From Macrostomum hystrix (taxonomy: Eukaryota; Animalia; Platyhelminthes): a stretch of DNA of 64,000 bases. The stretch is from assembly GCA_950097015.1 (NCBI GenBank), contig CATNEN010000002.1, forward strand, positions 6,138,001 to 6,202,000. The letters are read 5' to 3'. How positions within the stretch are numbered: the first letter of the stretch is position 1; every line of letters begins with the position of its first letter. The notes beneath the pieces were generated by a model. It had not been told where the DNA came from. It did not search any database and saw only the letters and a list, made by a program, of their open reading frames with translations. Below are positions 3,947 to 29,600 of the stretch, one piece after another. The translations under genes and the position numbers were made by a program.

Positions 3947-6900
3947 ATGACACTATTTCACTTTGTCAACTGTTTGGCTCTTGGGGCTGCGCCACACTTT
4001 ATTATTTACAAGTTTAGTGGCCTGTAAGTTTGATATATTTTTTAATTTTACATAATTTGTAAATGTAGGACATTTTTATCTATTTTTATCTATTAGCTAA
4101 GCTCATCTCAACTTCTGTGAAAAATTTAATGAAATCTTGGAGAGCTTGTCATAACATAGGCCTATTATTTTTTTTATTCTAAAAAACTACTATAAATCAT
4201 TTTGCCTCTTGCACCTCAATACCTGAGCTTTGCAATGCCATGGAGAGAGCTACAACCCATTTTGTCAAAGTAAACTTTGGCCTAATCTTATGTCTAAGAC
4301 TGGATTATGCTGGCAGCTGAGTGCTTGACAAAAAATGTTAAAAGCCTAGAGTGCACACAAAATAGTAAACATGCTTAGGCCCTTAAAGTTGACAGAAGTT
4401 TATTGTATATAGATATGCAAAATATTTCCCTTTATTACTATCAATGTCCTTTTATTGTAAAAAATTCAAACTAAAATACATTTGTGCTCTAAAGCATATA
4501 CAAAAAAATCTGGTGAATGGGCAATTAAACAATATTTTGTTTAATCAATATTAAAGTGAACAAATTTAATTAAACTTGAATGTTTAATCAAGTTTAATCA
4601 ATGTCAATATTTTCTCTTGGCAACAACCAAACTTGTTAGTGACTATTAGTTATTAGTGTAATGCAATGCATTACCAACCTTGAAGACAAAATTTCTGGGC
4701 ATAGAATACATGATTTGGACTATGTTTTTAAAAACAACATGACTAGGGACATGGTGGCCGTGCCTCTAACTCTATATCTAAGGACACAGCCGTGTCCCTA
4801 GCTACTTTGTGCCTAGCTACCATGCTACTCTGTGCCTAGAGCCATGGCAGCTGTGTCTTTAGCTGTGTGAACTTGTGGCACATCCGCCATGTCCCTAGCT
4901 CTGTGTATGGGGACACGGCGGCTGTGTTCCTAGTAATCTACCACTCACATGGTACACGGCGGTTGTCTCTGAACAATGGGCTTTAAATGCAACATGGTTC
5001 GATACATGTATGTAAGGTAGCTCGAACATCGCTGGTAGTGTCCATAAGGACGGTCAAATATTGTGTCAATCCAATATACTAAAACTCCTTTTAAATTATA
5101 CTACTATATTGCACAAGTATACTGTGTCGTGGAACGCGCAAACTTGTTCATTTTTTGTTTTCTTTATTATTGCTTTTTTTGATGCGTACATATCTTGAGC
5201 ATTTTTGTTTAAATTGACTGTTTGCTGGAATATAATTTAAGAATTAAACTTCTTACCTACCATGCCTAGAGACAAGTACCTTACAAAAATACATGTAGCG
5301 CCGTGCAATTACTTTATATACATGTATGTTAGCGCATCCAACATATAGACAAACTCAGATCCATGACACAGTATATACTTGTGAGTTTTAGTACTTCTTT
5401 TAGTATGATTGACACAATATTTGACCATCTTTACACTACCAGTGACGTTTGAGCTACCTACTTACATGTATCGAATCATGTTGCATTTAAAGCCCATTGT
5501 TCATAGACAACCGCCGTGCCCCCAGGCATGTTAGTGGTAGATTACTAGGAACATGGCCGCCGTGTCCCCATACACAGAGCTAGGGACACAGCGGCCGTGC
5601 TGCGAGTTCACGCAGCTAAGATACGGCCGCCATGGCTCTAGGCACAGAGTAGTGTGGTAGCTAGGGACACGGCGGCTGTGTCCTTAGACATAGAGTTAGA
5701 GGCACGGCCGCCATGTCCCTAGTCATGGCGTTTTAGAAATCAGCTTTGGGCTGTTGTGGTGTTAAAATGGTCACAAAATTTTGCTGCCCATTTTTTAAAT
5801 AAATTGAAAAAAGTTGAAATACTTACTTGTGGCTGAATTTACAATGGCAAAGTCAGCTAGAAAATCTAGGATTGATTTTCTGGATCCAAAATCTAGAAAT
5901 TGTTTAGAAGCATTCTTTTACAGAAGTTTTTTCTTATAAAGAATAAATTTTAAATAATATATCCTTTCAGAAAAAAATCCTGCCTAAAGAATAGTGACTG
6001 AGTGCAATGAGACCAATAAAAAGTCTTAAGGAGTAAACTGCTTATGCTGAGTGACATGCTACCACCAGGGTTAATAAATTATTGTAACTAGGCTTATCAA
6101 TCTGTTTTTCTCTCTATTTGTAGAGAGAATTCTTCTGGCCAATTCAACTCTTTCCTTTGCATAAGAATTCTTTATATATTTCCCTATACTTGGACTGGTG
6201 GGCCTGAAAAGGGCCGTATTTGCCTTTTAGTACTCCAATATTCTTATCTCTAAGAGCTTAACACTCTAATGGTAGCACTCATATATACAGCGCCTGTATT
6301 AGGCGTTGATTATTGGCTTATTTGCTTCACAGGTGGGATGGTTTTATTTGGTCATACTGCAAGGTATTTTTACTGCTAAAATATGTTCTAAAAGTGATAA
6401 TATTCTAAATATTTAAAGTATTATAATGTGCATAAAAATATGTTAAAAATTAAAAAATATAGAAAAATACGAATTAAGCCTTACCAAACCATTAAGTTAA
6501 GATGTGGAGCAGATTGTAGGTAAAACAAGGAAAACGGTCGTTTTCAAGGCCACCAAAAATACAATGTAAAATTACATGGGCAAGTTAAAGCAGTACTGAT
6601 AATAGTAAAGGTGCAGTTCCTGCGAAATAAAGAAGTCTATCAAAGAAAGAATATTCAAGTGATTTTCTCCACTATAAAAGTCAACTGAATTTAGATTTGA
6701 ATTTCCGCAGGCACGAGTACAGCGCGCTGTGGAAGTGCGGCCAGGTTGCTGGGGCCTATGTGCTCACCCAGCTGTGCAAAATGCTGCTCTTGGCTACATT
6801 CTTTCCTCAGTGGACTGGTGGCCTGGCCGATTTTCTGCGCTCAACCTGCGACCTGTTCGATTTGATTGGCCTGTTCCTTGTGTTCCAGCGGGTGTCTGGC

Positions 6901-8509
6901 AAGGGCAGCATCAAGATCCTGACGGTAGGAGCTGGCTGGGCGGCCGCCCACTTCCTGCTGACTAAAGTGCTGCCACTGTGGGTTGGCGCCAGCGGCCCCC
7001 AGTTTAGTTGGGCCTTTGTCAGGCTGAGCTATGAGTCCAACCTGGAGCTGGCCCAGCACCTGTGCCTAGCCCTGCTGCTGTGGCTGTACTGCAGATTCGA
7101 TCTGAGCAAAGCCCACCTGCCTGCTGTCACTGCCGGTATTCTGCTCATTAACTACCGGCCCTTCCTGTTCCAGTGAGATTCTAATAATTTATTTACCCGT
7201 GTCGCTCTGTTAATATTTGCGTGAGCAAAAAAAACAAAATTACTTTAGTTCGTCCAGTTATAAAAATCAGTCTCTTGTGATGGCTCCGTCTGTCCATGGA
7301 CTGGACAGTTGTACAGCTCATCGGATCTAATTGTTCCGCGGAAAGTTTTAAGTCAGCGAGAAAATAATTTTCTTCATTTCATTTCAGGCCAACTCCCAAG
7401 AGTCAACGAAAGTGTACACTGCCTGACGATGAGAAAGTCAAGGCAGATGTTCACACACATGTTTGATTTTGCGCTCAGGAGTCAGTGGAATAGACAGAAT
7501 TGCCTTCGCTGGCTGAGGCTGCTGTCACCAAACAGCACGAGGGTAGTGCGAGATGCCAGTGCCCACGGCCAGAATTATTATAACATACATTTAGTTAGTT
7601 AGGCACCAGAGTCGCCTGTTAGACACCAGAGTCGCCTGTTAGACACCAGAGTCACCTGTTCGACACCAGAGTCGCCTGTTAGACTCCAGAATCACCTGTC
7701 AGACACCAGAGTCACCTGTCAGACACCAGAGTCACCTGTTAGGCACCAGAGTCGCCTGTTAGGCACCAGAGTCAAATGTTAGACGCCAGAGTCGCCTGTT
7801 AGGCACCAGAGTCGCCTGTTAGACACCAGAGTCACCTGTTAGGCACCAGAGTCACCTGTTAGACACCAGAGTCACCTGTTCGAGACAAAAAATGATAATG
7901 AACTTGTGATTACACCTACCCCGATTGGGTCAGGTGTGCAGCCGACAGCACAGCCGCAGGTAAATGCGCGGCGCATTTCAAGGCTGCATACGGCTGTTCA
8001 GTCCATGGACTGGGGGGACGCCACATCCACCCTCAATTACCCCAGCTGTTGCTTGTACCCATTTAACAGCTGGCTGGGTGAACTGAAGCAATACAGAGTT
8101 AAGTGTCTTTCTAAAAGTCACAAAATTTTCCTGTTCGACTTTTCGGGAATCGAACTCCCGATCTTCATGTCAGGAGACCGAAGCCCTAACCACTAGGCTA
8201 CAACCCCTGCCTAGAGGTTAGACACTAAAGTCACCTGATAGACACCAGTTTCACCTGCAGTTAGTAGATGTAAAATAAATTATGAATCTACTATAGCTCA
8301 AACGCAAATCATTGCCTAATGAGATGCTTGCAATCGCTTTGTCGCTACACAGATCTCTTGGCCACCTAATGTCGGCTGGGTGGCAGCTGGCCGCTCACAC
8401 GGGTCTCACAGCTCTAGTCGGCCTGATGTCCCTGGCTGTTTATCAATTGTGGAGCGAGGAAATCACCGGAGCCCAGGCTAATGGCAAAACTGCTCATCAC
8501 CTGTACTGA
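3947..8509 (+). CDS. TMEM147: Transmembrane protein 147 (BOS/Nicalin-NOMO complex), 231 aa; exons 3947-4023, 6711-7172, 8353-8509
   Basis: MTLFHFVNCLALGAAPHFIIYKFSGL|HEYSALWKC...QLCKMLLLATFFP...LPLWVGA matches TMEM147; GT-AG introns with consistent phases, total 696 nt. Confidence 0.93.
4738..5727. mobile_element. Foldback/MITE with about 390-bp inverted arms in TMEM147 intron 1
   Basis: Left arm about 4738-5135 (catgactagggacatgg...) pairs with right arm about 5360-5727 (...ccatgtccctagtcatg); internal subrepeat gctagggacacggcgg. Confidence 0.8.
7598..7885. repeat. 20-bp minisatellite (agacaccagagtcacctgtt), about 14 copies, TMEM147 intron 2
   Basis: Direct tandem repeats visible; two more degenerate units at about 8215-8260. 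Confidence 0.9.
7906..8205 (-). mobile_element. SINE family B
   Basis: gggaatcgaactcccgatc...aaccactagg head (reverse); body acagccgcag...cggctgttcagtccatggactgg shared with 42320-42500. Confidence 0.7.
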
Positions 8510-9810: not shown

Positions 9811-11177
9811 GACCACGATGATGTTAAAAATATCCACATTTTAAGGGCGGTCTTTCAACTGTTAAAGCTAATTGTTTAAATCGTATAAAACACTCGTTGA
9901 CTTTGTGATTCACCGAAAACGACAGACAGGCTGCCCATGTCGGTTATGCTTTCGAAAAGTAAGTAGATAAATCATTAATGAAGTGTGGTGTCTCCCTTTA
10001 TTTATTATACAGGTCCCTAAGCTTTAGACCGAATAAAACTGAAGACAATGCTCCTGAAATAAACACTCGAATAAACGGGATGATTTTTGGTCTTGCATGT
10101 GTCTCGTATTTATAGCCTATTTGAACCCCTATCAGCCTGCCAGCGCTCGCTATTGGCTGAAGCGCCGTGGAGCTTTCTCATTGGCTGAAAAGATTTTAGC
10201 TGGCGGAAAAACCGTGGGCGCGCATAAACTGCCATGGAAAAACCTTGCGAAAAACTGGCCATAGTTCTGCACACAGACACTTGAAGACTCCAGCTCACTA
10301 ATTGTTACTAACAGAGGCATATCTAGACCATACAGCTCCGATGGCTAAATAGTCTTGTAGTTGAACTAGATGCTAAGCCTAGAATATTTATCGACTACAG
10401 AAGCTATATTGATCAGGATTCAAAACTTTTTTGTCCCTCACGCACCTCTTGTTGATGTACATACAATACAGGGCGCAGACATCACCCAACTGGTGATTGC
10501 CAACAGAGCAACACCTTGACAACTAATTCGACAGGATTGGCTGTCTATTGAACGAAAGGCTTTTTGCGTTCCAAAATTTTTTTAAATGGCTTGAACAAAA
10601 AATCACTTCTAATATGCAATACACAAAATTATTTTTTTTATTCCAAATAAGCCCGAAGAAACGGCATTTCAATGAAAGAGGTCTAGGGCAGATAAGAATG
10701 AAAATCCTACGGAAAAATATATCTACATGCTTTGGAGTGTTGCCTGGCTGCAAAATCTGGCTCCAAAGCAATTGTGTGTATCGTATTGCTTGCTTATCAC
10801 AGCTGCTATGGATAAACTAATGCGTACAGTCTGCTTCAGGAATGAAACAAATGGTATCGCGCAGTCCGCAGAAAATGCACTTGCTTACTTTACCCTCATT
10901 TATTTCTCTCTCTGAGCTAATTTTGAATACATTTGCTGATAGCTTTAAGTTAAGAAATGTACATTGGTAATCGCGCTATTTTTTGTTCTATAGAACAGAG
11001 AATTGCTTTAGGTGAAATCGTATCAGGAAACCGTCGCTTTGCAGAAGAATTCAGTGTACAGTCTTCCATCGCGATCCGCTAAAAAGCACATTGTCATTCT
11101 GTCTCCACAAGTAAATTTTGAGTGTCGCTGCTGAACCCTGAAGACTAATTGTTGAAGGTCCGCAGTTTGCTGCTAAA

Positions 11178-14100
11178 ATGGCCTTTAATTTCGTTTTTCA
11201 AGCTTTAAGAATGATAGTGACTATATTAATGCAAGCTTTTAGTCTGACGCAAAAAATCGACAGCTGCCAAGTAACTGATCAACAACTGCTTCAGGCTATC
11301 GTCACAGACGATGCAGAGATCATCGAACGTTACCTACAGAATCCTAGAAATCAAAACAGGCGGATTTCAGTTCAAGGGCGCACATTTTCCCCCATTCATC
11401 TGGCGAGTTTCCTCGGGAAAGCTACTTTTGTCGACTTATTTATAAACAGCCTTGCTCCAATAGACATGCGAGAAAACGGCTGTACACCTCTGTGGATCGC
11501 ATCACAAAATGGTCAACTGGAAATTGTTAGATCACTAGCTAAGGCGCATGGCGACATCGAATTTCAAGGAAAACGACGCGCGTCCCCAATTTATATCGCT
11601 TCATTCGTAGGTCACCCAGCAGTCGTGGATTTTCTCATCCAGGCCCAAGCTGACGTGAATCTTCAAGAAGCTGATGGCTGCTCACCTCTCTACATTGCAT
11701 CACAGCAGGGTTATCAGCGTATTGTGGACTCACTAATCAAAGCTCAAGCCGACGTGAATCTTCAAGAAGCTGGGGGCTGCTCACCTCTCTACATTGCATC
11801 ACAAGAGGGTCATCAGCTTATTGTGGACTCTCTAATCAAAGCTCAAGCCGACGTAAATCTTCAAGAAGCTGATGGCTGCTCACCTCTCTACATTGCATCA
11901 CAAAATGGCCACCAGAAAGTTGTGCTATCACTCATTGAGGCTAAAGCAGATGCAAATCTTCAAAGAAACGCTGGCTCGTCACCCATTTACATAGCAGCTC
12001 AAAATGGTCATCTAAAAATAACGAAGCTGCTGATCAAAGCACAGGCCGATATCAACCTTCAAAGAAAAGAGACAGGCGAATCCCCTATCTACATCGCATC
12101 TCAGAATGGACATGAGAAAGTGATCGAATCACTTATCAAAGCACAGGCCGACGTCAATCTCCGAACAAATAAAGGCATGTCACCTCTCTATATTGCTTCA
12201 CAAAACGGCCATTACCGAATCGTTGATGCTCTAATCAAAGCAAATGCAAATGTTAATCTTGAAGAAGCAGATGGCTGCTCGCCTCTCTACATTGCATCCC
12301 AATGTGGTCATGAGCGAGTCGTGGATTTCCTTCTTAATGCGCAAGCTGATGTCAATCAGAAGACAAAGTCGGGTTCGTCACCGATTTGCATTGCAGCCAG
12401 AAATAATCACTGGCGAGTTGTTGAAAAACTGATTCAAGCACAAGCCGATGTCAATCTCCAAGAAGCCAACGGATGGTCGCCTCTCTACGATGCGTCACTG
12501 TTTGATCATAAAAAAGTCGTTGAGTCACTCACAAAAGCGCAAGCTGACCTCAATCTTCAAAAAGTCAACTTTTGGTCGCCTCCTTACGCTGCGTTGCAAG
12601 TCCTTAAGTCACAAACCGACCTTGGCAGTCTAGAAATGGTGCCAAAAGCATCAGGCAAAAGTTCATTCCGGTGAGTTTCGAAACACAAGTTTTAATCTTA
12701 CTCTTTTAAATAGTTCTACAAATGTCTGCATTTTAAAGTAATATTATCAATTATTGAGTTAAAAATGCATGTGGATTTCAGAGGACTCAACGACCTGGAA
12801 TTGAGCATCCAGCTGCACTCAGCGCTTAACAAATCTGGATTTTTGGAGTCTCGAGCTGCCCTTCAGAGTGCTGTGTCCGATGTCTTGTCTGAGATTCTCA
12901 GGAAGAGAAAGAATTACGATGGCGTTTTTGTGGCTGGCAGCTACTCAGAAGGCTGGGGCAACAGTCTGCTCACATTGGACGGCAGAACTGACATTGACTC
13001 CGATATTGGCGTGTTGTATCTGATTCCTGGCAGATTGTATCACATAGCGGACCAGTGTAAATGTGTTGGAGAGCGCAGTACAGGACAGAATCAGTACAGG
13101 AATGGCCACATACTCTGTGCTGGATTTGGTGAGACTTTTATAATTAAGTGCCTATAATCAATAACTCATATAAGCGTATTGAGCGAAAAAAACTCAAATT
13201 TCACTTTTCAGCATCAAATCCCAGTCTGCCATCTTCTGGGTCCTCCGTAAGACCGGCTGTTGACAGTGTCTCCGCCAGCCGTCTTTGCAGCTACCCTCAA
13301 CTGGCGCTGCTCCATCCAAACCGAGTCAAATATTCCAATATCCCAGAGTCCGTGCTGGAGAATCTACGACGTGATCTCAACTCCGCCTCATCGCCCTGTT
13401 ATGTGGTTCACGCGGCTTCTCCCGGACGAGCAGGCTTAGAGCTCCGCGTGAGCACCAGCTTCCTGGAAAAGCGGTTGCTGAGAAGTCTCAACACCCTACA
13501 AGGCCAGCTGTTCGTCACTCTCAAGTACCTGGTGAAGAAGGTCGTCTGTCCCGCAGGCGGTAGTTTTCAAGGTCTGAAGTCATATCACGCGAAGACCATC
13601 ATGTTCAGAATGCTGGATGAGACACCAGCCGAGCAGTGGAAGCCGGAAAACCTTCTGAATCTAGTGAGACGATCTCTGCAGATGCTACTGGACTGCGTGG
13701 ACAGCAACCGAACACCTGATAATGCTGATGGTCGCATCATGGAGCATTTTTTCCTGACCGATGCTCAACTGTACCTCAAAGGCTATGATCGAGGGATCCT
13801 GGACAGAATCGCAGATAGATTGAGAGCAGAGATTGAGCTGCTGCCTGAGTCTCTGGTGCGGTTTGCGAACAGCCTCAAGCCCGTGAGTGAGTCGGGCAGA
13901 TTCTACTTTCACCCGTTCCTAATTCTGCCGGATTTGAGACCAATGAGCCTGCCACGGACCAGCAGCGGACTGGAATACTATGAGATCTACGATGTAGTGA
14001 GAGAGTGTGTTCTGCGTCTATCGCATGGAGACTGCGGCGAGCAGTCTCAGGTGTCTCTCACGGAGCTAATTGACAGACTGCCAGACTGCGCCTTCACGAC

Positions 14101-14644
14101 ACGGGAGGCTCTCAGAGTGCTCAATTGCCTCAAGTTCGGCAGTCAAAGTACCGCAGAGTACATTTTGAACAAGTGCAGCGCACACGAGGTGAGCAGAGGC
14201 ATCGATTGGCCCGTTGAGAAGTCGGCGGCGCCTGAAGCGACTGCTGGCTATGTTTGGTGGCACATGAGCAGTCAGGACTCAGCTTGGAAGTTCTGCTTTC
14301 AGTTTGACGAGCAACCAAAGTTCAAATTTCTGACAGCAGCGGTAGCTGAGACCTTTCCAATGGAGGCAGGCAACAGTTTTGGAATTTTCTTTATCAACTT
14401 CGACGCTCTCATGTGGGCTCTGCGTCTTCAGCTGCAGACAGAGCCGTACGGTATCACTGGGAGATGGATTAGTGACGTAGCCAGGCGCGAAGAATCGGAT
14501 GCGCAAGAGCTGCTGGTCGCCATCCTATTTTCGAAGAATTTCGAAGAGACACATAGCCTCTTCGTGAAGCTGACGTCACTGTCAGCTCACTCGCTCTCCG
14601 CTTATCTTTGGAAAGAGATCGACAAAAAGTTGCAGCATCCATAA
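11178..14644 (+). CDS. Ankyrin-repeat + Mab-21/cGAS-like nucleotidyltransferase (cGLR-like) fusion, about 1090 aa; exons 11178-12670, 12782-13128, 13212-14644
   Basis: 12-13 ankyrin repeats (SPLYIASQxGH); intron 12671-12781 (cg|gtgag...tttcag|a) and intron 13129-13211 (g|gtgag...ttttcag|ca) join three ORFs in frame (3273 nt); Mab-21 motifs GSYSEG..SDIG, VDSV, LRVSTSFLEK, LKSYHAKT, W..ENL, EHFFL; AATAAA at 14681. Confidence 0.88.
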
Positions 14645-17600
14645 ATTGCGCAATTCAGAAGTACCGCCAAATAGAAGTCAAATAAAAGTTTTCCTGACTT
14701 TACGAGTACATAGTCTCTCTTAGAATCCATCGTCGCATGTGAAGTACAACGTACTACGTACTACCTACTAATACATTGTAGGTTAAAGGACAATGACTTC
14801 TGCAGAAGACGTATTTTTGCAGCTCTTACGTAGTTCACAAACAGAACTGTGTCGGCCATCTAAGCGGGGTCGTCACATTCTGATAACACTAGCCATGTAG
14901 TGTGGAGAGACGCGAATCAATCAGAGGCAGTATTTTTGCAGCCAAAGGTATTGGGGTCGCATTGTAGAGCACCAAATTAAGGGCAAAAAGTTACTTTTTA
15001 TCTCCACCCCCTCCTGTGACTACGTTTTTGTCTATGGCACAAGATAGATTGGTGAACGATGCCCAGAAACTATGGTACTTGAATTTTTACTTTTACACGC
15101 GCGAGACAGTTTTCTGTTTGACCTGGTAAAAAACATGATATTATTTTGCCTTTTACTGATAAAACATAAAGGCTACTCCTATTTTGATGTTCGTTGTCAC
15201 TAAAACTGTGTGAATTAAATTTCACTCGTAATTTTTATGAATGTACCTTTTCTTCATGACACAGAAGTCGTTTAGTAGGTAGAGATGAATCTTTGATTAT
15301 ACGAGCTAGTATTGTATTCTTTTTTAATTGTATTTTTCTCACACTTGTTTTTAGTGCTACGAGTATTACTGGTTATTAGTAGCAGACTTACTGCTCTCTA
15401 GGCTTAGACTAATCCTTTGCCCTTCACAGGTACCCTCCCTCCCTCCCTCCCCTTGCACGATGACTCACACTGCGCGACCTTGAGATGTCAAATCCACTCC
15501 CGGTCTTAAATTTTTTTCCTTTCTGTCAATTAACTGCACCCACCACTCACATTTCCATTTCGCACATTGCCATAAATCTATTCCTCTTTTTCAGTCCCAC
15601 GACCACCTCCCTCCCTTCCTTTGTTCTCCCAATCAAATTTCATAGTATGTAATCATGCGTTAAAAAAGATATTTTTCACAGTCGCGCACCCCCCACCCTA
15701 TATAGTAACAACCAATCACCAAAAGGCTGGCGAAGCACCACAGATCTGGGTGCAGTGCAGCAAACAGGTCAAGGTCGGGTTGATCACGCGATCACGTCGT
15801 CCGACCTGCTCTATTTAGGCAAGCGGTGCGGAGCGCTGTTCTGATCAAAATTTGCCTTTTCCGGTTCCGTAGCCTGTTGTACTTGCCTTTCGTCGTCGTG
15901 AGTCTTTGTCGCAGGTCGGACGAAGACCTTCCATTTTGCCCGTTCGTAATCCTTGGTTACAATCCCGGACCACGGACTCTTCCTGACCGTTATCTTCACC
16001 CGTCACCTTTCTGAGAGGTGATCGTCGGTGTTCCGTTGCTACCGACGTTGAGCGGTTCCCGACGCCTTCGCCATCATAAGCGAGTAGGAAACGTCCAACT
16101 TACCGGCCGCACCATTTCTGCCCATAGCCGCCCTACCTGCCTGCAGCCAGTGCTTCGCCGCCGCATTTGTGGCCTCTAGGCCTCATGCGTTGGAATAACT
16201 CCTAATTGCGCCATTTTTCTCGGTTAGATCTCTCTCTCTCTCTATCTTTCCCAGTCCAGCTCTTAATTTATGTGATTTTTGCTTCTGAAGTAAGCAACGA
16301 ATAGAACATCGGACTCTTATCTGGGATTTCAATTACAAAGACAGATTTCAATTTCACGACAGTAGATAGATACGAGCTCTATTTCACAGTCACGACTATA
16401 TAAAACTATGAGCTTCTTATGTACTCATATAGGATTAGTTTAGGTCTTGCTCACGAGACACGAGAATACATGGAAGCCGAACATTGCCCTATCTGTATTG
16501 TTGGGGCCTGGTGATTCGGAGTAAGCCTTAACCGGTGAAACTGTAGACATGGTTTATGCATGTGCATGGTGCATGGTTTAAGCAGGACTTAGTCGATTAA
16601 TTAATTAGCATTCCTATCGAGTGTCACATTTTAAATGTCAAATTTGAAAAATAAAACAATTGATTCACCGATGAACCTGGGACAGTACAAGTAATTGAAA
16701 AACTAAGTTTCGTGAAGAAAATGATCTTATTATAAATATAATTATGTATTAATATACTTTAATTTTTGCTACATACTGTTCTGCTCAAGCCAGCTTGAAG
16801 CATCTGAAGTTTAAAAAGTTGAACTATTCCATCGTGAATACTGCGCACAAGCATGTGTATAATTGCTACTCGCAGTATGTAAATGCTCTTATATTTTAAA
16901 GTGCCGAATGCAATACTCTGTGTTCATAAAAGGATATAATAATGGTAAATTGCCAAGTTTGCATGATTATATTCAGTTTAATATCAATAATTCAATTAAT
17001 TAAATGCAATAATGATTATATTATAACAATATTTACAATGAATCACTTAAAATGACAGAATCTCAAAAAGTTGGTGTTGACACTTTCCTCCAGGCTATGG
17101 TATTTGCTTATCTAGTGGGTTTGCTGTAGCACACATTCACTAGAATGGAAACAGTTGGTATGTTAGATGAGATATGCATTAGAAAAATGCTTCTCTAAGC
17201 CTAAGGCTCATTAGCTAAATTAGTAGCTAGTAAGTTATAGTAGGCCTATATGTATATAATTTAGTAATTATAGTATATAATTTACTAGCTAGCTAGGTAT
17301 GTCAAAGCAATAGACAACTTGGTAACTTGCCAAAATGGTAAATCTTTATGTCATTTTGTATCTAGAAAAAGTATTAAACAGTTTGATATTAAATAAACAA
17401 ATAATTAGTTTTCCCATGTTTGTTAAAACAAGGTAATATTAACTGTAAATACATTTAGGTGTTATGCTAGCTAGGCCCTTATTGTATTTGTGTTATTAAG
17501 AAGATAACAAATTAAATCTTTTTAATAGGTGTTAAATTGCCATAGAATACATTCAAGAGAGAGAAGAAATTTATAATGCATGTGATGTGGTCTAGGAAAG

Positions 17601-18185: not shown

Positions 18186-21100
18186 ATGTCATCAGCCAAA
18201 GATGATTGCCTGGTCTTGCTAAGCCGGGGTGTCCTGAAGAAAATGCGGCTTGGAGAGAAGCCAGACATCAGTCCAATTGTTCTGCAAGTGGTCGACTGCA
18301 AACCATTCGCTGGCAGCGGCCGCTACCGCCTGACCCTCACAGATGGCGAGCCACGTAGTGAAATTCTAGCCATGCTGGACCCCAGCATGAATTTCTATGT
18401 AACAGACGGAGCTCTGCAGCGTGGCACTGCGCTCCAGATCAATGACTACAACCTGACTGGCCCGGCGGTCACTGCTGCCGCTCTGCCAGTCATTTTCACC
18501 ATCCTTGATCTCTGGCCAATCGGCTGCTTCAAATTGCCGCAAACTGGCGATGGATTGCTGCAGCAGCCAGCGGCGGCTGCTTCTGCGCCATCCAACACGG
18601 CCACTGGCAACGTCATTGACAATGGCGAAGTACTCGACGTCAGCTGCCCGAAGCCCATATCGGCGCTGAATCCTTACCAGCTGCGCTGGACTATTCTCGG
18701 CCGGGTTATGCGGAAGAGCCGGGTCAGTCGTTTTCCCCCTTTTCCCATCAGCCGAATTTCTAATCACTAAACTCTAACCCTAGCTATCAAATATCATACA
18801 TGATATAGCCTCGGTGCTCAAAGCATTTAGAGGCAACAGACCCACAGCCGGCGAGAAGGCAGTTTTGTCCAATCCGCTGACTCGTGGCGCGCACACGGGT
18901 ACCGTACGTAGGCATATCGTCAGGCAGTTTACACGTTCACGGTTCCTTGGTGTGGGGGTTAGCCCTCAGGGCGTAAATTGCACAGGAAGCCTCCGATCCT
19001 TCTCCCCATACCTGCGCCCCAGATTAACGTGGCATTGCCGCGTAATCGGGGGGGACCTTGATTGCCGGAGTCGTACGCATTTGTCACTCACCTTCTCGGT
19101 GCAACCAACCGATTTCAAGCGCACAAACCGCCTCGAACTCACAGCTGCGAGCATACAAAGCACGCGGCCGCGAGGGCCAGCTGTTTAATTTTCTCCTCGC
19201 CGATGGCAGTTCGGCGATCAGAGCGGTGGCTTTCAGAGACCAGGCGGAACAGTTTTATCCCCTGGTGGAGGTCGGCAGGGCTATCTATCTCAGCACTGGC
19301 CGGCTGCAGCTCAAGGACGAGCGATACGATAATGGCAGTGGTGAGCCTCAAAATTATTTCATCTGATATTCTCCTGTCTTTATTAAATTTGTCCAATCTT
19401 TATCGGAGCGAATTAAAAAGGCGAGGCAGTAGGACAGACGATACACGGGAGAGACGCAATTGTTTTCACGGGAGAAATGAGACACGGGAGAGATGATACA
19501 CGGGAGAGATGGTACACGGGAGAGATGATACACGGGACAGATGGTACACGGGAGAGATTAGACATGGGAGAGATGAGACACAGGAGAGATGAGACAAATG
19601 GAGAGTTCCGACGCGAGAGACATGAGACACAGGAGAGATGAGACAAATGGAAGAGACGAAGCACGCGAGAGATCATGCAGGGTAGGGGCAAGACAGGGTA
19701 GAGATGAGACACGGGAGAGACGAGACATGGCAGAGATATCCAACTAGCATTTAGTTGCTCGTGACTGAACGTCGTCGCCTTCGCCCCTGCAGCTCAATCT
19801 TCCTCATCGGCAGGATGCACTTCCGCCGCGGCTTCGGACTTACTGACCGCCAAAGCCGACTGCTGCCCATACGAGCTGGTGCTGACTGCCGAAACTCGCC
19901 TTCAGCCGCTGACGGAGGACGGCTCGGCTGCTGCGACTGCTGCCTGCTCATTTGCCGGCCTGCCGGAGCTGCAGTTCAACTTTGTGGCCATCGACAAGCT
20001 GGCCGGGGTTAAGCCCAATACGTGAGTTGTGAGCTGTTTGGAAAAATGTCCCATTTTCCGGACCCATGCTGACTTTGTGTCCCTCGATATTGGAAATAGA
20101 ATAGAAATTATACTATTCTATATACTGTACAGTCGCAGCCATGTACAACTGTTTTGTCCATAGACTGAGGTGGCCGCCACACCCACTACCCCTGCCGATG
20201 CTGATACCAACTTTTGTGCTGGTAAACTGTATTAATAAAGAATACAGCGTCTTATTCCAGAATCAATTTTCAAACAAAATTTAAAAGCAAATGTGTAAAG
20301 TAGCAAAATTTCAATAAAAGCTTAAAACTGTCTGTAAACTATTCTATGTCCGAGACTCCGAGCTTGACCCGATTTCGGCCCAAGCCGTCGGGAATGGCCC
20401 AAAATGACCCATGCCACCGAACTCTACCCCGAAAAGACGGTCTCTTACTGGAAAGACTCAATTAACAAATAAGAAATCATGAATACCAGCTGGTACCGTT
20501 TAATTAACGTTATAACTGTTATTAATGTTGTAACAGCTGACTGAACTGCAGCAATACAGAGAGAATTAAGTGTCTTGCTAAAAAAGGACACGAACTGTTT
20601 CAGTGGATTTGAGAATCGAACCCCCGACCTTCAAGTCGTGAGTCCGACGCTCTAACCACTAGGTTATATCCCCTATCAAATATATCAAACGATAGCAAGA
20701 AAATAAATTAAGTTTCATTAGTTCCAGTAAACCTCAGTTCCCAGGTGAAGAAATAGAGTTTTCTCATTGTATTTTAAGCCTCATCGTGTATTTAGTCAGA
20801 TTGCCCAGCTCAGAGCTCTGATCTCAAATCAACCGCCCCTCCGCCTCAGGCTAGTGGACGTGTGCGCCGTTGTTCACGAGACGCGCGACTGCCAGCAGTT
20901 CGTTCCGGGTAGCAGCGGCGGCCGGCAACGCCGACGGGAGACGGTCAAGCGGGACCTGATCCTGGTGGACGCCTCGGGCTGGTCGGTTCGCTGCACCCTT
21001 TGGGGCGAGGAGGCGACCGCATTTGGCGATCAGGGACTCGACCAGCACCCAGTTGTAGCCATCCGCTCCGCGAAAGTGTCCGACTATGCCGGTCGCTCCC

Positions 21101-22435
21101 TCAGCGCGTCAACCGGAATCTGCCAGCTGCTGACTGAGCCGCATGGCGTGGCCGAGGCCCGAAGACTGCGCAGCTGGTACCAGACGGAGGGCTGCCGACT
21201 TGCCGAGTTTCACAGCTTCGCGCCTAATGGCAACAGCGGAGGCGGCGGCGCTCGCGGCAGCGGTGGCAGCCGGGATGGTGGTTTGCGCAGCCTCCGCGAT
21301 ATCATCAGCGGCCAGTCCGGCCAGTGGGATCGGCGAAGCATCGGTGGTGGCGGCGCATTCTCCTGCCTGGCCCACGTGACCTGCCTGCGTAGGGAGAACT
21401 GCGTGTACAAGGTTCGTCACCTCAAACTGTATGATGCTTAAAAACTTTTTCGCAACATATCGGCAAAAATTTTCGTTAGCTCAGTTTGAGATTAGCCTTT
21501 GTCTAATCTCAGTATCTAATCTTAGTGACTAATCCCATTGTTGTCTAATATCAGTGTCTAATCACATTGTCTGATCTTTGTGTCTAATCTCATTGTCTGA
21601 TCTATGATTCTATGATTTTTAGGCTTGCCCCCTGCCCAGCTGCAACAAGAAGCTGGTTCAGTGCGAAGGCAATTATCGTTGCGACAAGTGCCAGGCCGTG
21701 CACTCTGAGTTCAAATGGCGCTTCATTTTGAGCGTCAACCTGGCCGACTACACGTGCGCCAAGTGGGCCACCTGCTTTGATGTGAGTCCAAGGCAAAGTA
21801 CGACAATCTGCCCCTTATCTATTTCCTCATTTTTTAAATCCTTTCTTTAGCTAATCCCCACTTTCGCCGATCTCCACTTTTCTAATCCGCTATTTATCGA
21901 ATCAGCTCTTTATCCAAATAAATTTTTATCCTATATCCGCCATTTTTCAAATCCGCTCTTTATCAAATCCGCTCTTTATCCAATCCGCTCTTTATCCAAT
22001 TCGCTCTTCATCCAAATTCTGCTCTTTATCCGATCCGCTATTTATCCAATTCGCTCTTTATCCAAAATCTGTTCTTTATCCGATCCGCTCTTTATCTAAT
22101 CCGATATTTATCCAATATTTTTCTTTTCGTCCTCTTTGCATCCGTCATTCATTATCCGCACCAACCCGCAGGCTCCAGCTGAGAAGCTACTCGGAGTCAC
22201 CGCAGCTCAGCTTGGCGGCCTACTCGAAGGCGGCGAGGACGGACTCAACCGGGCCAAGGCTGTGTTCGCAGCCGCTGCGGACGGACAGATTTTAGAGTTC
22301 TCGTTGCGCTCCAGAATGGACACCTATCAAGACGAGCTGCGCCAGCGCCTTGTGGTTCTTGACGTGCGGCCTCCTGATTGGCTGGTAGCTAGTACGGCGC
22401 TGATTGGCCAGCTTAAAAGCAGTACGGCGCGCTGA
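18186..22435 (+). CDS. RPA1: Replication protein A 70-kDa subunit, 648 aa; exons 18186-18722, 19145-19340, 19793-20021, 20850-21411, 21623-21781, 22172-22435
   Basis: ISALNPYQLRWTI, EGQLF..IRAVAF, VRCTLWGEEA, VSDYAGRSLS, YKACP..CNKKL..YRCDKC zinc finger, RMDTYQDELR; frames consistent across 5 introns (1947 nt). Confidence 0.92.
19430..19735. repeat. Degenerate minisatellite (ggagagatgagacacg) in RPA1 intron 2
   Basis: Same unit as the arrays at 39300-39960 (reverse) and 44200-44400. Confidence 0.85.
20429..20463 (+). ncRNA. Spliced-leader (SL) RNA-like 5' fragment, probable pseudogene, in RPA1 intron 3
   Basis: ccgaaaagacggtctcttactggaaagactcaatt matches 32/35 positions of the Macrostomum lignano SL exon as I recall it (ccgtaaagacggtctcttactgcgaagactcaatt-tattgcatg); lacks the terminal ATG, GT donor and Sm site. 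Confidence 0.6.
20480..20672 (-). mobile_element. SINE family B
   Basis: gagaatcgaacccccgaccttcaagtcgtgagtccgacgctctaaccactagg is the reverse tRNA-like head. Confidence 0.75.
21890..22115. repeat. Degenerate tandem repeat (atccgctctttatcc) in RPA1 intron 5
   Basis: About 12 visible copies. Confidence 0.8.
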
Positions 22436-22811: not shown

Positions 22812-24560
22812 TGGGATCAGGGAGTGAATAGCAACTGAGGCAGTGAGGATCAGGGAGTGGATTGCAACTGAGGCAGTGGAGGGTCAGGGAGTGGATAGCA
22901 ACTGAGGCAGTGAGGATCAGGGAGTGGATTGCAACTGAGGCAGTGGAGGGTCAGGGAGTGGATAGCAACTGAGGCAGTGAGGATCAGGGAGTGGATAGCA
23001 ACTGAGGCAATGGAGGGTCAGGGAGTGGATAGCAACTGAGGCAGTGGAGGGTCAGGGAGTGGATAGCAACTGAGGCAGTGAGGATCAGGGAGTGGATAGC
23101 AACTGAGGCAGTGAGGATCAGGGAGTGGATAGCAACTGAGGCAGTGGAGGGTCAGGGAGTGGATAGCAACTGAGGCAGTGAGGATCAGGGAGTGGACAGC
23201 AACTGAGGCAGTGGAGGGTCAGGGAGTGGATAGCAACTGAGGCAGTGGAGGATCAGGGAGTGGATAGCAACTGAGGCAGTGAGGATCAGGGAGTGGACAG
23301 CAACTGAGGCAGTGGAGGGTCAGGGAGAGGATAGCAACTGAGGCAGTGAGGATCAGGGAGTGGATAGCAACTGAGGTAGTGAGGATCAGGGAGTGGATAG
23401 CAACTGAGGCAATGGAGGGTCAGGGAGTGGATAGCAACTGAGGCAGTGGAGGGTCAGGGAGTGGATAGCAACTGAGGCAGTGGAGGGTCAGGGAGTGGAT
23501 AGCAACTGAGGCAGTGAGGATCAGGGAGTGGATAGCAACTGAGGTAGTGGAGGATCAGGGAGTGGATAGCAACTGAGGTAGTGGAGGATCAGGGAGTGGA
23601 TAGCAACTGAGGCAGTGGAGGATCAGGGAGTGGATAGCAACTGAGGCAGTGAGGATCAGGGAGTGGATAGCAACTGAGGCAGTGAGGATCAGGGAGTGGA
23701 TAGCAACTGAGGCAGTGAGGATCAGGGAGTGGATAGCAACTGAGGCAGTGAGGATCAGGGAGTGGATAGCAACTGAGGCAGTGAGGATCAGGGAGTGGAT
23801 AGCAACTGAGGCAGTGGAGGATCAGGGAGTGGATAGCAACTGAGGCAGTGGAGGATCAGGGAGTGGATAGCAACTGAGGCAGTGAGGATCAGGGAGTGGA
23901 TAGCAACTGAGGCAGTGAGGATCAGGGAGTGGATAGCAACTGAGGCAGTGAGGATCAGGGAGTGGATAGCAACTGAGGCAGTGAGGATCAGGGAGTGGAT
24001 AGCAACTGAGGCAGTGAGGATCAGGGAGTGGATAGCAACTGAGGCAGTGAGGATCAGGGAGTGGATAGCAACTGAGGCAGTGAGGATCAGGGAGTGGATA
24101 GCAACTGAGGCAGTGAGGATCAGGGAGTGGATAGCAACTGAGGCAGTGGAGGATCAGGGAGTGGATAGCAACTGAGGCAGTGGAGGATCAGGGAGTGGAT
24201 AGCAACTGAGGCAGTGGAGGATCAGGGAGTGGATAGCAACTGAGGCAGTGGAGGGTCAGGGAGTGGATAGCAACTGAGGCAGTGAGGATCAGGGAGTGGA
24301 TAGCAACTGAGGCAGTGGAGGATCAGGGAGTGGATAGCAACTGAGGCAGTGAGGATCAGGGAGTAGATAGCAACTGAGGCAGTGAGGATCAGGGAGTGGA
24401 TAGCAACTGAGGCAGTGAGGATCAGGGAGTGGATAGCAACTGAGGCAGTGGAGGATCAGGGAGTGGATAGCAACTGAGGCAGTGAGGGTCAGGGAGTGGA
24501 TAGCAACTGAGGCAGTGAGGATCAGGGAGTGGATAGCAACTGAGGTAGTGGAGGATCAGG
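22812..24560. repeat. 27/28-bp minisatellite (gaggatcagggagtggatagcaactgaggcagt[g]), about 1.75 kb
   Basis: Near-perfect head-to-tail units with no spacers. Confidence 0.97.
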
Positions 24561-24582
24561 AAGTTGAATGTTATTAAAGCAG

Positions 24583-26628: not shown

Positions 26629-29600
26629 TTACTTCGAAGCGTTCGCCTTGGCCCCGCTGCCGCCGCCTTCCTTCTTGTTGACAGCGTAGGACAGTTTTAG
26701 GCGGGCCGACTCGCCCACAATGGCATGGTTGGCCAGGCAGATGGCGTCCGTGGCGTCCTGGGGTGTCTCGAAGGTGATCCAGCCAGTTGTGCACTTCTCG
26801 CTCTGCATGACCACCTCAACGGGGGCGGGGGCGCCGGCCTCCTTCAGGGCTTCGCGCACCGTTTCATCGTCGCTACCGTCAGGACAGCCCCAGAAGTACA
26901 GCACCTTGCCAGTCTTGCCCAGGGAGGCCTGATTTTTGGAGGCCGACTCCGGCGTCATGAAGCGGTTGAACTTCAGCGTATCGTAAGACTTTTCAGCCAG
27001 GGTGCCGTCGGACAGGGTGAAGTCCTTGGTGTTGCGCTTCACATTGTCCTGCGGTGTGGTTGAATTTTTTCGGGGGGGCGGAGAGTAGGATGAGCTTGGG
27101 GCGAAGTTGACTGACAGGGTTTCACAGGGAATTACACACGAAAGACGGAATTTCAGACGAAAAACAGAAAACGACACAATAGACCTGGAAAAACAGACAA
27201 AAGACAAGGAAATTACAGAAAAAGGACAGGGAAATGCAGAAAAAAACTTACGAAACTTTGAAGAAAGCAACTCACCTGGTCAGAAAGCGACACCCTGATG
27301 GTGCTGCCAAGGATGCGCTGGTTGTTGAGATGCTGCAGCGCCTGCTGAGCAGATCCGGAGTCGCACATCTCAACAAGGGCGAAGCCCTCCTTGGTGGTGA
27401 GGAACTTGATCCGGCTGACATTGCCGTACAGCACCAGCACGTTGAACAGCCGGTCGCAGTTCATCTGGCTGCTGAGGCCGCGGATCACGATGATGTTCTG
27501 GCCGGGGTGCGCGTAGGCGGCGGCGTAGCCGGCGGAGGCGGGGTTGGCGGCGGCCGCGGCCGCGGCCACTCGCGACACCAGATTCATGGCGCTCTGGGCC
27601 AGCAGCTCGTTGCCGGAGGCGCCAACTCCGACGCCGCCGCCGGCCGAGCCGACGATGCCGCCGGTGGCTTGGCCGGTCAGCTGGCCGGGCCGGCCCACCA
27701 TGCCCATCGAGTGCCCGATGCCGCCGGCGCCGACGAGGCCCTGTAGGCGGGTGCCGAGTAGGCCGACCTCGTCGTTAGGATTGCCGAGCAGGCCGCCGCC
27801 GCCGCCGCCACCTCCGGGTACAACGCGGGCTCGCTTGTGCATGCCGGCGGAAGCTGCGGCCGCGCCGCCGCCAAAGACAGCCATGGCCTCGGCGTCGCCT
27901 TCGTAGCGGTACTCTTCGAGCACGGTCTCTCTGGAGAGATTCGGCAGCGTAAGCTTTGTGCTTTGCTCAAACTTATTATCAGCATAATTTATAGTGCACT
28001 GCTCAAAGTAATTCTGATTTGTACTTCAATACAAACTGTACTGAGTCTGACCTGGACATAAAGTACTCAAATGCGTTAGCCCTGGCGTAGTCGCAGCGAA
28101 TGGCATTGCAGTTGGTGTACATGTTGGCACCGTTTAGAAACGGCTTGGCCAGAGCGGCGTCTTCCAGTCGCTCAAATTCCACAATGGCCCGGTGCAGGCC
28201 GTCCTGTGTGGGAGAGGCAACCAACCAGGTTTGGAAGAAGTGAATATGAACAGCTGGGATAGGCACAGATTTGAGATCGATGGCTATTGGGAAGAGATGG
28301 GAAATAGATGAGATAAAGAAATGGAAGACAATGAAGAAGAAGGGGAAGGAAAATAAGGAAAGGGAATAAATAGGAGAGGAAAAGACAGGGAAGGGAGAGG
28401 AAAAGAAGGGGAAGGGGGAGAAAAAGAAGGGGAAGGGGGAGAAAAAGGAGGGGAAGAGGGAGGAAAAGAAGGGGAAGGGGAGGAAAAGAAGGGGAAGAGG
28501 GAGGAAAAGAAGGGGAAGAGGGAGGAAAAGAAGGGGAAGGGGAGAAAAAGAAGGGGAAGGGGAGAAAAAGAAGGGGAAGAGGGAGGAAAAGAAGGGGAAA
28601 GAAAGAGGAAAAGAAGGGGAAGAGGGAGGAAAAGAAGGGGAAGAGGGAGGAAAAGAAGGGGAAGGGGAGAAAAAGAAGGGGAAGGGGAGAAAAAGGAGGG
28701 GAAGAGGGAGGAAAAGAAGGGGAAGGGGAGAAAAAGAAGGGGAAGGGGAGAAAAAGAAGGGGAAGGGGAGGAAAAGAAGGGGAAGGGGAGAAAAAGAAGG
28801 GGAAGAGGGAGGAAAAGAAGGGGAAGGGGAGGAAAAGAAGGGGAAGAGGGAGGAAAAGAAGGGGAAGGGGAGGAAAAGAAGGGGAAGGGGAGGAAAAGAA
28901 GGGGAAGGGGAGGAAAAGAAGGGGAAGGGGAGAAAAAGAAGGGGAAGAGGGAGGAAAAGAAGAGGAAGGGGGAGAAAAAGAAGGGGAAGGGGGAGAAAAA
29001 GAAGGGGAAGAGGGAGGAAAAGAAGGGGAAGGGGGAGAAAAAGAAGGGGAAGGGGGAGAAAATGAAGGGGAAGAGGGAGGTAAACAGATCGAGGTAGGGG
29101 AGAAGCAAGAGACTAGGTAAGAAAGTAGGCCAGCAGCATGCGCTCACCTGCTGTCGGATGATGACGCATCTCTCGATGATGGCGTAGGGGCTGCAGATCT
29201 GGCGCACATCGGTGCAGTTGAAGTCCATCTTCATGTTGTAGATGGTGAGCAGTAGGCAGTTCTGAGCTCCCACGGACAGGTAGGGCTCCTGGCTGAGGTC
29301 GATACGGGAGCGGTTAGAGAAGCTGATGATGACGCTGGAGCCTTTGAAATTGACGCCCGGGCCGGAGTGGTGATAGGCGATGAGGCGCTCGGCGTCGCTG
29401 AGTCGCAGGTACTCAATGAGGGCCTGGTGCTTGGCCGGCATGGGGAAGATCAGCTGGATCTTGCCGAACTCCTACGGAACAAGTCGTTACTTTTAGCGTT
29501 AATATAAATCCTTATCAAATCCTTAATTAATCCAATTCTTATTCGTGTGTGGATACCCTTATGCAGGCAGGCACACACTCACACAGGTGGGTACACTCTC

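What the first reader, a model, noticed from the sequence alone, without database searches (positions are those of the whole stretch)
11178..14644. Ankyrin-repeat array fused in frame to a cGAS-like (Mab-21/cGLR) nucleotidyltransferase: candidate flatworm innate-immune sensor
Seen: three ORFs that the ORF track lists separately splice into one 1090-aa protein through two short GT-AG introns with matching phases. It has 12-13 ankyrin repeats, then an NTase core (GSYSEG, SDIG, VDSV) and a Mab-21 helical lobe (SYHAKT, W..ENL, HFFL), then an extra about 230-aa helical C-tail. Established: cGAS/cGLR enzymes make cyclic dinucleotide second messengers after ligand sensing and signal through STING; ankyrin arrays are protein-binding modules. 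Inference: this may be a receptor in which a variable ankyrin array recognises a protein ligand and gates nucleotide-signal synthesis, unlike nucleic-acid-sensing cGAS. Ankyrin-Mab21 architectures do occur in some invertebrates, so novelty is not guaranteed; I know of no characterised flatworm example. No STING or other partner is in this window.
Basis: partly seen in the sequence, partly recalled or inferred. Interest (0 to 1): 0.88.

Follow-up and report, generated by a model that had tools for sequence, protein, structure and literature searches.

The report
Ankyrin-cGAS-like flatworm gene, degenerate active site
This is a real, expressed three-exon flatworm (Macrostomum-type) gene that joins 12-13 ankyrin repeats to a cGAS-like enzyme domain and a family-specific tail, but the gene family was catalogued in 2023 and this copy lacks one of the three acidic residues the enzyme needs, so it probably cannot make a nucleotide signal.

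Summary
Three ORFs (11178-12670, 12782-13128, 13212-14644) join through two GT..AG introns into a 1090-aa protein, and both joints are present in transcript contigs of four public runs.

- **Architecture:** 12 full ankyrin repeats plus a degenerate 13th, then a cGAS-type nucleotidyltransferase domain, then a tail of about 250 aa with no known fold.
- **Relatives:** all close relatives that carry a species name are Macrostomum lignano proteins with the same layout, about 50% identical over the full length.
- **Prior knowledge:** Li et al. 2023 already list ankyrin-cGLR fusions. They cloned five M. lignano family members, and none is marked active.
- **Earlier scan hits:** this scan has already reported the same family at other places in this genome (s1-332673, s1-268083, s1-300413, s1-084972).

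100 of 110 family domains carry GS..DxD..D. This copy alone has D-I-G, with Gly574 (GGC, 13008-13010) in place of the second metal-binding Asp. The transcripts carry the same letters.

The copy therefore fails the published active-site criterion. It is most likely an inactive paralog, either a non-catalytic sensor or regulator, or a gene at the first step of decay. It is a new member of a known kind, of modest interest.

The parts
11037..11177 (+). 5' untranslated region (at least this much is transcribed)
   Evidence: Transcript contigs begin at 11037 and 11103. Two in-frame stops lie upstream of the ATG.
11178..12670 (+). Exon 1: start codon, short N-terminal segment and the ankyrin array (aa 1-497 plus two bases of codon 498)
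   Evidence: ORF. Pfam Ank E 1.5e-79 and Ank_2 E 5.4e-81. The paralog P0003 aligns only from aa 18, so Met12 or Met18 could be the real start.
11382..12632 (+). 12 ankyrin repeats of 32-34 aa (aa 69-465) and a degenerate 13th capping repeat
   Evidence: The repeat register is anchored on the [ST]P[ILP] motif. The spacings are 32, 33 (x5), 34 and 33 (x5) aa. The most variable positions are 2, 11, 14, 15, 18-19 and 31-33.
12671..12781 (+). Intron 1 (111 nt, GT..AG, falls after the second base of a codon)
   Evidence: Sequence. The stretch is skipped in contigs of all four runs.
12782..13128 (+). Exon 2: N-terminal helix and first strands of the nucleotidyltransferase core (aa 498-614)
   Evidence: It aligns with the family's N-lobe. 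The cGAS-like domain of the paralog model starts here.
12936..12941 (+). G550-S551, the G[S/G] activation-loop motif (present)
13002..13010 (+). Catalytic pair position: D572-I573-G574. Codon GGC (13008-13010) stands where the family has Asp, one transition away from GAC.
   Evidence: codons; all 24 paralogs have S-D-[ILV]-D; 100 of 110 domains have DxD, and this is the only DxG. Transcript contigs show no differing letter here.
13129..13211 (+). Intron 2 (83 nt, GT..AG, falls after the first base of a codon)
   Evidence: Sequence. The stretch is skipped in contigs of all four runs.
13212..14644 (+). Exon 3: rest of the NTase core, C-terminal helical lobe, family-specific tail and stop codon
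13262..13264 (+). D631, the third catalytic acid (P-A-V-D-S-V), present
   Evidence: The column is invariant in the 24 aligned paralogs. It lies 54 residues after the D-I-G-V strand, within the published X50-90 spacing.
13514..13822 (+). Mab-21_C (HhH/H2TH-like) helical lobe
   Evidence: Pfam PF20266, E 1.5e-7, 32 bits against a cut-off of 24.1. The family profile aligns here with Cv-cGLR1 and mouse cGAS, E 2e-6 to 4e-6.
13895..14641 (+). Family-specific C-terminal domain (aa 842-1090; ten helices and two short strand pairs)
   Evidence: AlphaFold model of this window's own sequence: pLDDT 87, pTM 0.87. There is no PDB match (best E 0.16) and no ESM Atlas match (TM 0.42 or less). The domain is conserved in the paralogs.
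14645..14900 (+). 3' untranslated region (transcribed at least to here)
   Evidence: Contigs run past 14900.

Best explanation
The locus is one expressed gene of the Macrostomum-type family with the layout ankyrin array, cGAS-like receptor domain and C-terminal tail. The 1090-aa product has an N-terminal solenoid of 12-13 ankyrin repeats, a domain with the cGAS/cGLR fold, and a tail of about 250 aa found only in this family.

In most members the fold carries the full GS..DxD..D site. By analogy with cGAS and cGLRs, those members would make a nucleotide second messenger once an unknown ligand is sensed (inferred, never shown for this family). In this copy the second metal-binding Asp is Gly574, so the two-metal site is incomplete. 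Nucleotide synthesis is therefore most likely lost or severely reduced (inferred from the motif).

The rest of the protein looks as conserved as its paralogs. It is either kept for a non-catalytic role (binding a ligand or partner through the ankyrin array, scaffolding or damping active paralogs) or it is an intact-looking gene at the first step of decay. The data cannot separate these two.
For: Shown:
- Both joints lie in frame and the fusion is a single transcript.
- Ank and Mab-21_C domains are present.
- The protein aligns collinearly over its full length with M. lignano proteins such as PAA88786.1: aa 18-1083 against 1-1160, 50% identity.
- D-I-G stands where all 24 aligned paralogs and 100 of 110 family domains have D-x-D.
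- The same letters are in transcript contigs of four runs.
- Li et al. call the motif h[QT]GS X8-20 [DE]h[DE]h X50-90 h[DE]h essential for second-messenger synthesis, and confirmed by mutagenesis that four enzymes depend on the active-site motif.
- The copy keeps 26 of 28 family-invariant columns. Its 7 departures in 106 columns that are invariant among close paralogs lie within the paralogs' own range of 0-10.
- A non-catalytic role has a precedent in the family. The M. lignano proteins P0055 and P0205 combine a family domain with a degenerate site (DxN..S in P0055; P0205 is its 90% cluster-mate), ankyrin repeats and a caspase domain.
Against: - No enzyme assay exists for any member of this family. 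The five M. lignano members in the 2023 screen carry no activity note although their sites are intact, so the family's chemistry is unknown.
- An acidic residue two positions before the first catalytic Asp (D-I-D-S-D-I-G) might partly substitute as a metal ligand. Many paralogs also have Asp or Glu there, so it is not a specific compensation.
- The effect of losing only this one carboxylate is taken from the motif definition and from my memory of cGAS single mutants. It was not tested here, and the paper read here uses only the double mutant E225A/D227A.
- The four runs come from one study and may be the same laboratory line as the assembly, so Gly574 could be a private allele.
Confidence: 0.66

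Rival explanations
1. This is the first reader's reading: the protein is an active cGLR enzyme whose ankyrin array senses a protein ligand and switches on cyclic-nucleotide synthesis.
For: - The protein has the cGAS fold, and GS, the first Asp and the third Asp are in place.
- The gene is intact, spliced and expressed.
- Overall conservation is like that of the paralogs.
- A nearby Asp (D570) gives a D-x-D pattern shifted by two residues.
- The variable ankyrin positions are the usual binding-surface positions.
Against: - The second metal ligand is Gly, and this is the only such case among 110 family domains.
- The shifted D-I-D-S does not fit [DE]h[DE]h, because Ser takes the hydrophobic place. 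In the paralog model it lies in the loop before the strand.
- No family member has shown activity.
- No ligand or receptor is known.
Confidence: 0.17
2. Gly574 is a private or polymorphic allele of the sequenced laboratory line, or an assembly-plus-line artefact. In that case the species' normal gene is an ordinary intact-site family member.
For: - The change is a single A-to-G transition, GAC to GGC.
- Everything else in the gene is conserved.
- The four supporting runs belong to one study and may be the same line as the assembly.
Against: - The genome and contigs from four samples agree, with no differing letter reported at the 10% threshold.
- About 9% of family domains show other active-site departures, so degenerate sites do occur in this family.
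Confidence: 0.12
3. The two halves are separate genes, and the apparent fusion comes only from assembly of overlapping or neighbouring transcripts.
For: The tool warns that a contig across two genes does not prove a single transcript. The contigs also break inside the ankyrin array at 11702-11884.
Against: - Both introns are removed exactly and keep the reading frame.
- No clustered transcript starts or ends are reported.
- Dozens of M. lignano proteins have the same collinear layout.
- The contig break coincides with near-identical repeat units whose word depth exceeds 1000, which points to an assembly problem rather than a transcript end.
Confidence: 0.03

Closest known systems
Macrostomum lignano ankyrin-Mab21 proteins (for example PAA88786.1 BOX15_Mlig029835g1 = P0003, and BOX15_Mlig016300g1 = P0182), named 'ANK_REP_REGION' or 'Mab-21-like HhH/H2TH-like domain-containing' in UniProt
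   Same: They share the same collinear layout of ankyrin array, cGAS-like domain and tail of about 250 aa. Identity is 45-50% over the full length for the best full-length matches and 54-62% in the NTase plus tail for the closest paralogs. They also share invariant columns including SYHAK, W..N-L and HFF.
   Different: - No member is more than 62% identical in the NTase plus tail, although the neighbouring TMEM147 is 97% identical in protein. There is thus no evident one-to-one ortholog among annotated M. lignano proteins.
- This copy has D-I-G where they have D-x-D.
- The M. lignano TMEM147 locus that was read has no such gene within 10 kb downstream; its upstream side is cut at 715 bases by the contig end.
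Animal cGAS-like receptors as defined and catalogued by Li et al. 2023 (PMC9980059), including ankyrin-cGLR fusions such as those of Stylophora pistillata and five cloned M. lignano members (PAA86972.1, PAA45980.1, PAA57558.1, PAA93208.1, PAA68676.1)
   Same: - The NTase core plus helix bundle and the predicted structural homology to cGAS are shared.
- The ankyrin-repeat fusion is an architecture the paper lists.
- The cloned M. lignano constructs show this family's motifs, including the tail: GS..G-W-G-N, S-D-I-D, F-H-P-F..L-P and L-P-D-C-A.
   Different: - This copy does not meet the paper's active-site criterion.
[quoted passage not shown]
- No M. lignano entry carries an activity note in Table S3.
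Human and mouse cGAS (for example PDB 4k9b, 6ct9)
- The GS loop and the strand E-F-D-V-M of cGAS correspond to D-I-D-V-M of the family.
- The C-lobe aligns by sequence profile, E 4e-6.
   Different: - Identity is only about 15-18%.
- The spacer between GS and the catalytic pair is 20 residues.
- Ankyrin N-terminus and an extra C-terminal domain are present.
- Pfam's Mab-21 NTase model (PF03281) is not detected.
- This copy lacks the equivalent of human D227.
MB21D2 and Mab21L1 (orphan or non-enzymatic members of the Mab21 superfamily)
   Different: The sequence profile matches cGAS and Cv-cGLR1 much better than Mab21L1 (E 2e-6 against 0.17). Those proteins have no ankyrin array or tail.

Membership tests
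cGLR as defined by Li et al. 2023 | Active-site motif h[QT]GS X8-20 [DE]h[DE]h X50-90 h[DE]h | tested here: not met
   G550-S551 are present (preceded by V-A, not Q/T). The spacer is 20 residues. Then comes D572-I-G574-V, so the second acid is missing. After 54 residues comes V-D631-S. 100 of 110 family domains meet the pattern, and this is the only DxG.
cGLR as defined by Li et al. 2023 | [quoted passage not shown] | tested here: met
   Mab-21_C scores above Pfam's cut-off in the window's exon 3. The family profile hits Cv-cGLR1 and cGAS C-lobes at E 2e-6. Exon 2 and the start of exon 3 align with the family's N-lobe.
cGLR as defined by Li et al. 2023 | Predicted structural homology to known cGLR/CD-NTase enzymes | tested here: met
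cGLR as defined by Li et al. 2023 | Ligand-dependent synthesis of a nucleotide second messenger | not testable with these tools
   This needs biochemistry. The five M. lignano members in the 2023 screen have an empty Note column.
cGLR-STING pathway | A STING or other cyclic-nucleotide receptor in the same genome | not tested
   No STING query sequence was available by reference. None was found among the ten neighbouring ORFs of at least 150 aa that I scanned in the window. No scan note on this genome mentions STING. Macrostomum is absent from Table S5 of Li et al..
Macrostomum ANK-cGLR-tail family | Collinear ankyrin array, cGAS-like domain and conserved C-terminal domain of about 250 aa | tested here: met
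   The protein aligns over its full length with P0003, P0012, P0009 and P0007. The tail aligns with 24 paralogs, with invariant N168 and D202. 83 cluster representatives match at E below 1e-10.
Pfam Mab-21 NTase domain (PF03281) | Match to the Pfam model of the N-terminal NTase part | tested here: not met
   There is no hit in the window's pieces at E up to 1, although the domain is split by intron 2. There is also none in full-length paralogs or their NTase parts at E up to 10. Only weak generic NTase hits appear at the GS strand.
Ankyrin repeat proteins | Tandem 33-aa ankyrin repeats | tested here: met
   Pfam Ank E 1.5e-79 with 11 stretches. 12 regular repeats plus a degenerate cap.

The most novel reading that the evidence does not exclude
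This copy may be a naturally retained, catalytically dead ankyrin-cGLR. It would act as a decoy, a dominant regulator or a ligand-binding scaffold for its active paralogs. More broadly, the Macrostomum family, with its unmatched C-terminal domain and its caspase-fused relatives, may signal through protein-protein contacts rather than, or as well as, a STING-type nucleotide pathway.
Probability: 0.2. Interest if true: 0.55.

Novelty: new member of a known kind. Interest (0 to 1): 0.3.

Why it matters
Flatworms are usually described as lacking cGLR immunity, and Macrostomum is the exception, with a large expansion fused to ankyrin repeats. This copy adds little to that known picture. Its value is as a natural single-residue active-site variant in an otherwise conserved, expressed gene. 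It gives a ready-made comparison for asking whether these proteins act as enzymes at all. It also marks the birth-and-death turnover expected of an immune receptor family. The tail domain shared by the family has no structural match and remains an open question.

Tried and rejected
- I could not submit the spliced protein itself to Pfam, structure prediction or the database searches, because no reference exists for a sequence joined across introns. I worked with the three exon pieces, with paralogs from the database, and with scripts.
- I looked for the window's own protein in the 5.8-billion-protein collection using paralog P0003 as bait. That gave 44 hits, all M. lignano, and none closer than 62% in the NTase plus tail.
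- I looked for a syntenic copy beside M. lignano TMEM147. The coding DNA is only 85.5% identical and there is no ANK-cGLR within 10 kb downstream. The window is therefore not that haplotype, and the exact species or subgenome stays open.
- Fold searches of the tail in the PDB and the ESM Atlas gave only generic helical-repeat noise.
- A findings search by sequence was blank.
- Paper searches for cGLR, cGAS or STING together with Macrostomum found no study of this family beyond the supplementary table of Li et al..
- I considered RNA editing as a rescue of Gly574 and rejected it. The genome has G where Asp needs A, and A-to-I editing reads as G, not as A.
- I considered H-to-Y at the family's C-H-V-V strand as a second lesion and rejected it, because cGAS itself has Tyr there in F-Y-L-V.
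Full report
**Observation**

The ORF list shows 11178-12674, 12765-13157 and 13148-14644 on the + strand. Reading the sequence gives the gene structure:
- Exon 1 ends at 12670, two bases into a codon.
- Intron 1 is GT..AG, 12671-12781 (111 nt).
- Exon 2 (12782-13128) ends one base into a codon.
- Intron 2 is GT..AG, 13129-13211 (83 nt).
- Exon 3 runs to the stop at 14642-14644.

The joined CDS is 3273 nt and translates to 1090 aa with a single terminal stop. Two in-frame stops precede the ATG within the transcribed leader.

**Expression**

Four public runs from one 2020 study hold 81-86% of the sampled words. Laid on 11000-14900, their contigs skip exactly 12669/12781 and 13127/13211 (GT..AG, 'cut +1') in all four runs. 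A 2961-nt contig runs from 11884, inside the ankyrin array, through both joints to past 14900 without a differing letter.

Contigs break only at 11702-11884. There the word depth rises above 1000, because near-identical ankyrin units are shared with paralogs. No clustered transcript ends were reported. The runs' kind is given as '?', and I take them as RNA-derived because they lack both introns.

**Domains**

- Exon 1 gives Pfam Ank E 1.5e-79. Exon 3 gives Mab-21_C E 1.5e-7, at 32 bits against a gathering score of 24.1.
- There are 12 regular repeats (aa 69-465) and a degenerate 13th. Variability is concentrated at the usual surface positions.
- Exon 2 alone has no Pfam hit. The Pfam Mab-21 NTase model is also not found in full-length paralogs, so the N-lobe is very divergent.

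**Relatives**

An exhaustive HMMER search with exon 3 found 317 cluster representatives at E 0.001 or better and 83 at E 1e-10 or better. Most of the best hits are proteins of about 1100 aa matched at their C-terminal halves.
- Every named member of this closer set that I looked up is from Macrostomum lignano, and three are unnamed metagenome contigs.
- The spliced protein aligns end to end with, for example, PAA88786.1 at 50% identity. The best identity in the NTase plus tail is 62%.
- Among the weaker hits whose source I looked up, the named ones are bivalve cGAS-like proteins, and these hits match only the C-lobe.

The neighbouring TMEM147 exon is 97% identical in protein but only 85.5% in DNA to an M. 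lignano copy. That copy's locus has no ANK-cGLR within 10 kb downstream. The window is thus a Macrostomum-type genome but not that haplotype. The family turns over far faster than the housekeeping neighbour.

**Fold**

An AlphaFold model was made of the paralog P0182:540-1148, which is 59% identical to the window's NTase plus tail, using 24 family sequences. It reached pLDDT 89.9 and pTM 0.91.
- Foldseek's top hits are human, mouse and pig cGAS and Cv-cGLR1, at probability 1.0.
- The family profile matches Cv-cGLR1 and mouse cGAS C-lobes at E 2e-6 to 4e-6, and Mab21L1 only at 0.17.

The tail was modelled from the window's own sequence (13895-14641) at pLDDT 87 and pTM 0.87. It has no match in the PDB (best E 0.16) or the ESM Atlas (TM 0.42 or less).

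**The active site**

In the family alignment the columns G-S, S-D-[ILV]-D and P-A-x-D are invariant or nearly so. With the window's protein added, it reads G550-S551, then T-D-I-D-S-D572-I-G574-V, then P-A-V-D631.
- The Gly codon is GGC at 13008-13010, one transition from GAC.
- Across 110 family domains that cover this region, 100 have GS..DxD..D. Nine show other departures, and the window is the only DxG.
- In the paralog model the D-I-D-V-M segment is the strand that corresponds to E-F-D-V-M of cGAS.

Li et al. require h[QT]GS X8-20 [DE]h[DE]h X50-90 h[DE]h. They call this motif essential for second-messenger synthesis and confirmed by mutagenesis that four enzymes depend on the active-site motif. 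The window meets the spacings (20 and 54 residues) but not the second acid.

Otherwise the copy is not degenerate. It keeps 26 of 28 family-invariant columns. The second departure, H to Y, is the residue cGAS has at that place. Its 7 departures in 106 columns that are invariant among close paralogs fall within the paralogs' own range of 0-10.

**What is known**

Li et al. [quoted passage not shown] Their Table S3 lists five M. lignano proteins cloned for the screen (rows 89-93). The constructs show this family's N-lobe and tail motifs.

Follow-ups of this scan reached the same view for other copies in this genome. I checked the catalogue claim in the paper itself. The architecture and the family are therefore known. 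Their ligand, product and receptor are not.

**Mechanism**

The steps shown are a single spliced mRNA, the ankyrin array, the cGAS fold (on a paralog) and the missing Asp. The inferred step is that loss of one of three metal-binding carboxylates abolishes or cripples nucleotide synthesis. The basis for that inference is the published motif definition, the common use of E225A/D227A as a dead cGAS, and my memory of single-mutant data, which I did not check here.

The protein could still bind partners through the ankyrin array and the tail. M. lignano proteins that combine a family domain with a degenerate site (DxN..S in P0055), ankyrin repeats and a caspase domain (P0055 and P0205) show that non-catalytic use of this domain is plausible in the family. 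Equally, the change may be a recent first step toward pseudogenisation, or a private allele of the sequenced line.

**Surroundings**

The neighbours are ordinary genes: TMEM147 at 6697-7176, RPA1 exons at 18186 and 20767, and an RRM protein at 27213-27920 on the minus strand. No second copy of the gene lies in the window. No STING-like gene was found among the ten large ORFs scanned.

**Verdict**

This is a new member of a known kind, and it probably has an inactive catalytic site.

Noticed in passing
P0055 (PAA59752.1) and P0205 (PAA80948.1), Macrostomum lignano proteins, not in the window: These proteins carry a family cGAS-like domain, ankyrin repeats and a C-terminal caspase (Peptidase_C14) domain. 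In P0055 the catalytic site is degenerate (DxN..S). This possibly links the family directly to a cell-death effector.
   Followed up: partly
window 22814-24564: A 33-bp satellite with 52 copies, 96% alike (GGATCAGGGAGTGGATAGCAACTGAGGCAGTGA). It accounts for the strong GC skew of this stretch.
   Followed up: no
window 28376-29084 and 31278-32188: A purine-rich 21-bp array (34 copies) lies inside a 385-aa ORF on the minus strand that has no Pfam hit. A 30-bp array (30 copies, 96% alike) overlaps ORFs on both strands, one of which has a sub-threshold 'Decapeptide repeat' hit.
   Followed up: no
window 6697-7176 (+) compared with L001:715-1184: The TMEM147 exon is 97% identical in protein but only 85.5% in DNA to the M. 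lignano copy BOX15_Mlig025570g2, and the downstream DNA is not collinear. The window is either a different subgenome copy or a sister Macrostomum species.
   Followed up: partly
window 18186-18770 and 20767-21441 (+): These are exons of a replication protein A large-subunit gene (Rep-A_N, E 5e-8; REPA_OB_2, E 7e-21), just downstream of the finding.
   Followed up: no
window 11655-11916: Word depth in the transcript contigs jumps from about 8 to between 100 and 1200, and the contigs break here. The loose ends read like other ankyrin units, so many expressed paralogs share near-identical repeat units.
   Followed up: no
P0028, P0051, P0083 (JGI/IMG metagenome contigs of 1-3 kb): These unnamed environmental proteins are 31-42% identical to the window's C-lobe plus tail, or to the tail alone (P0083). 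The tail domain therefore exists outside the annotated M. lignano proteome, in organisms not identified.
   Followed up: no
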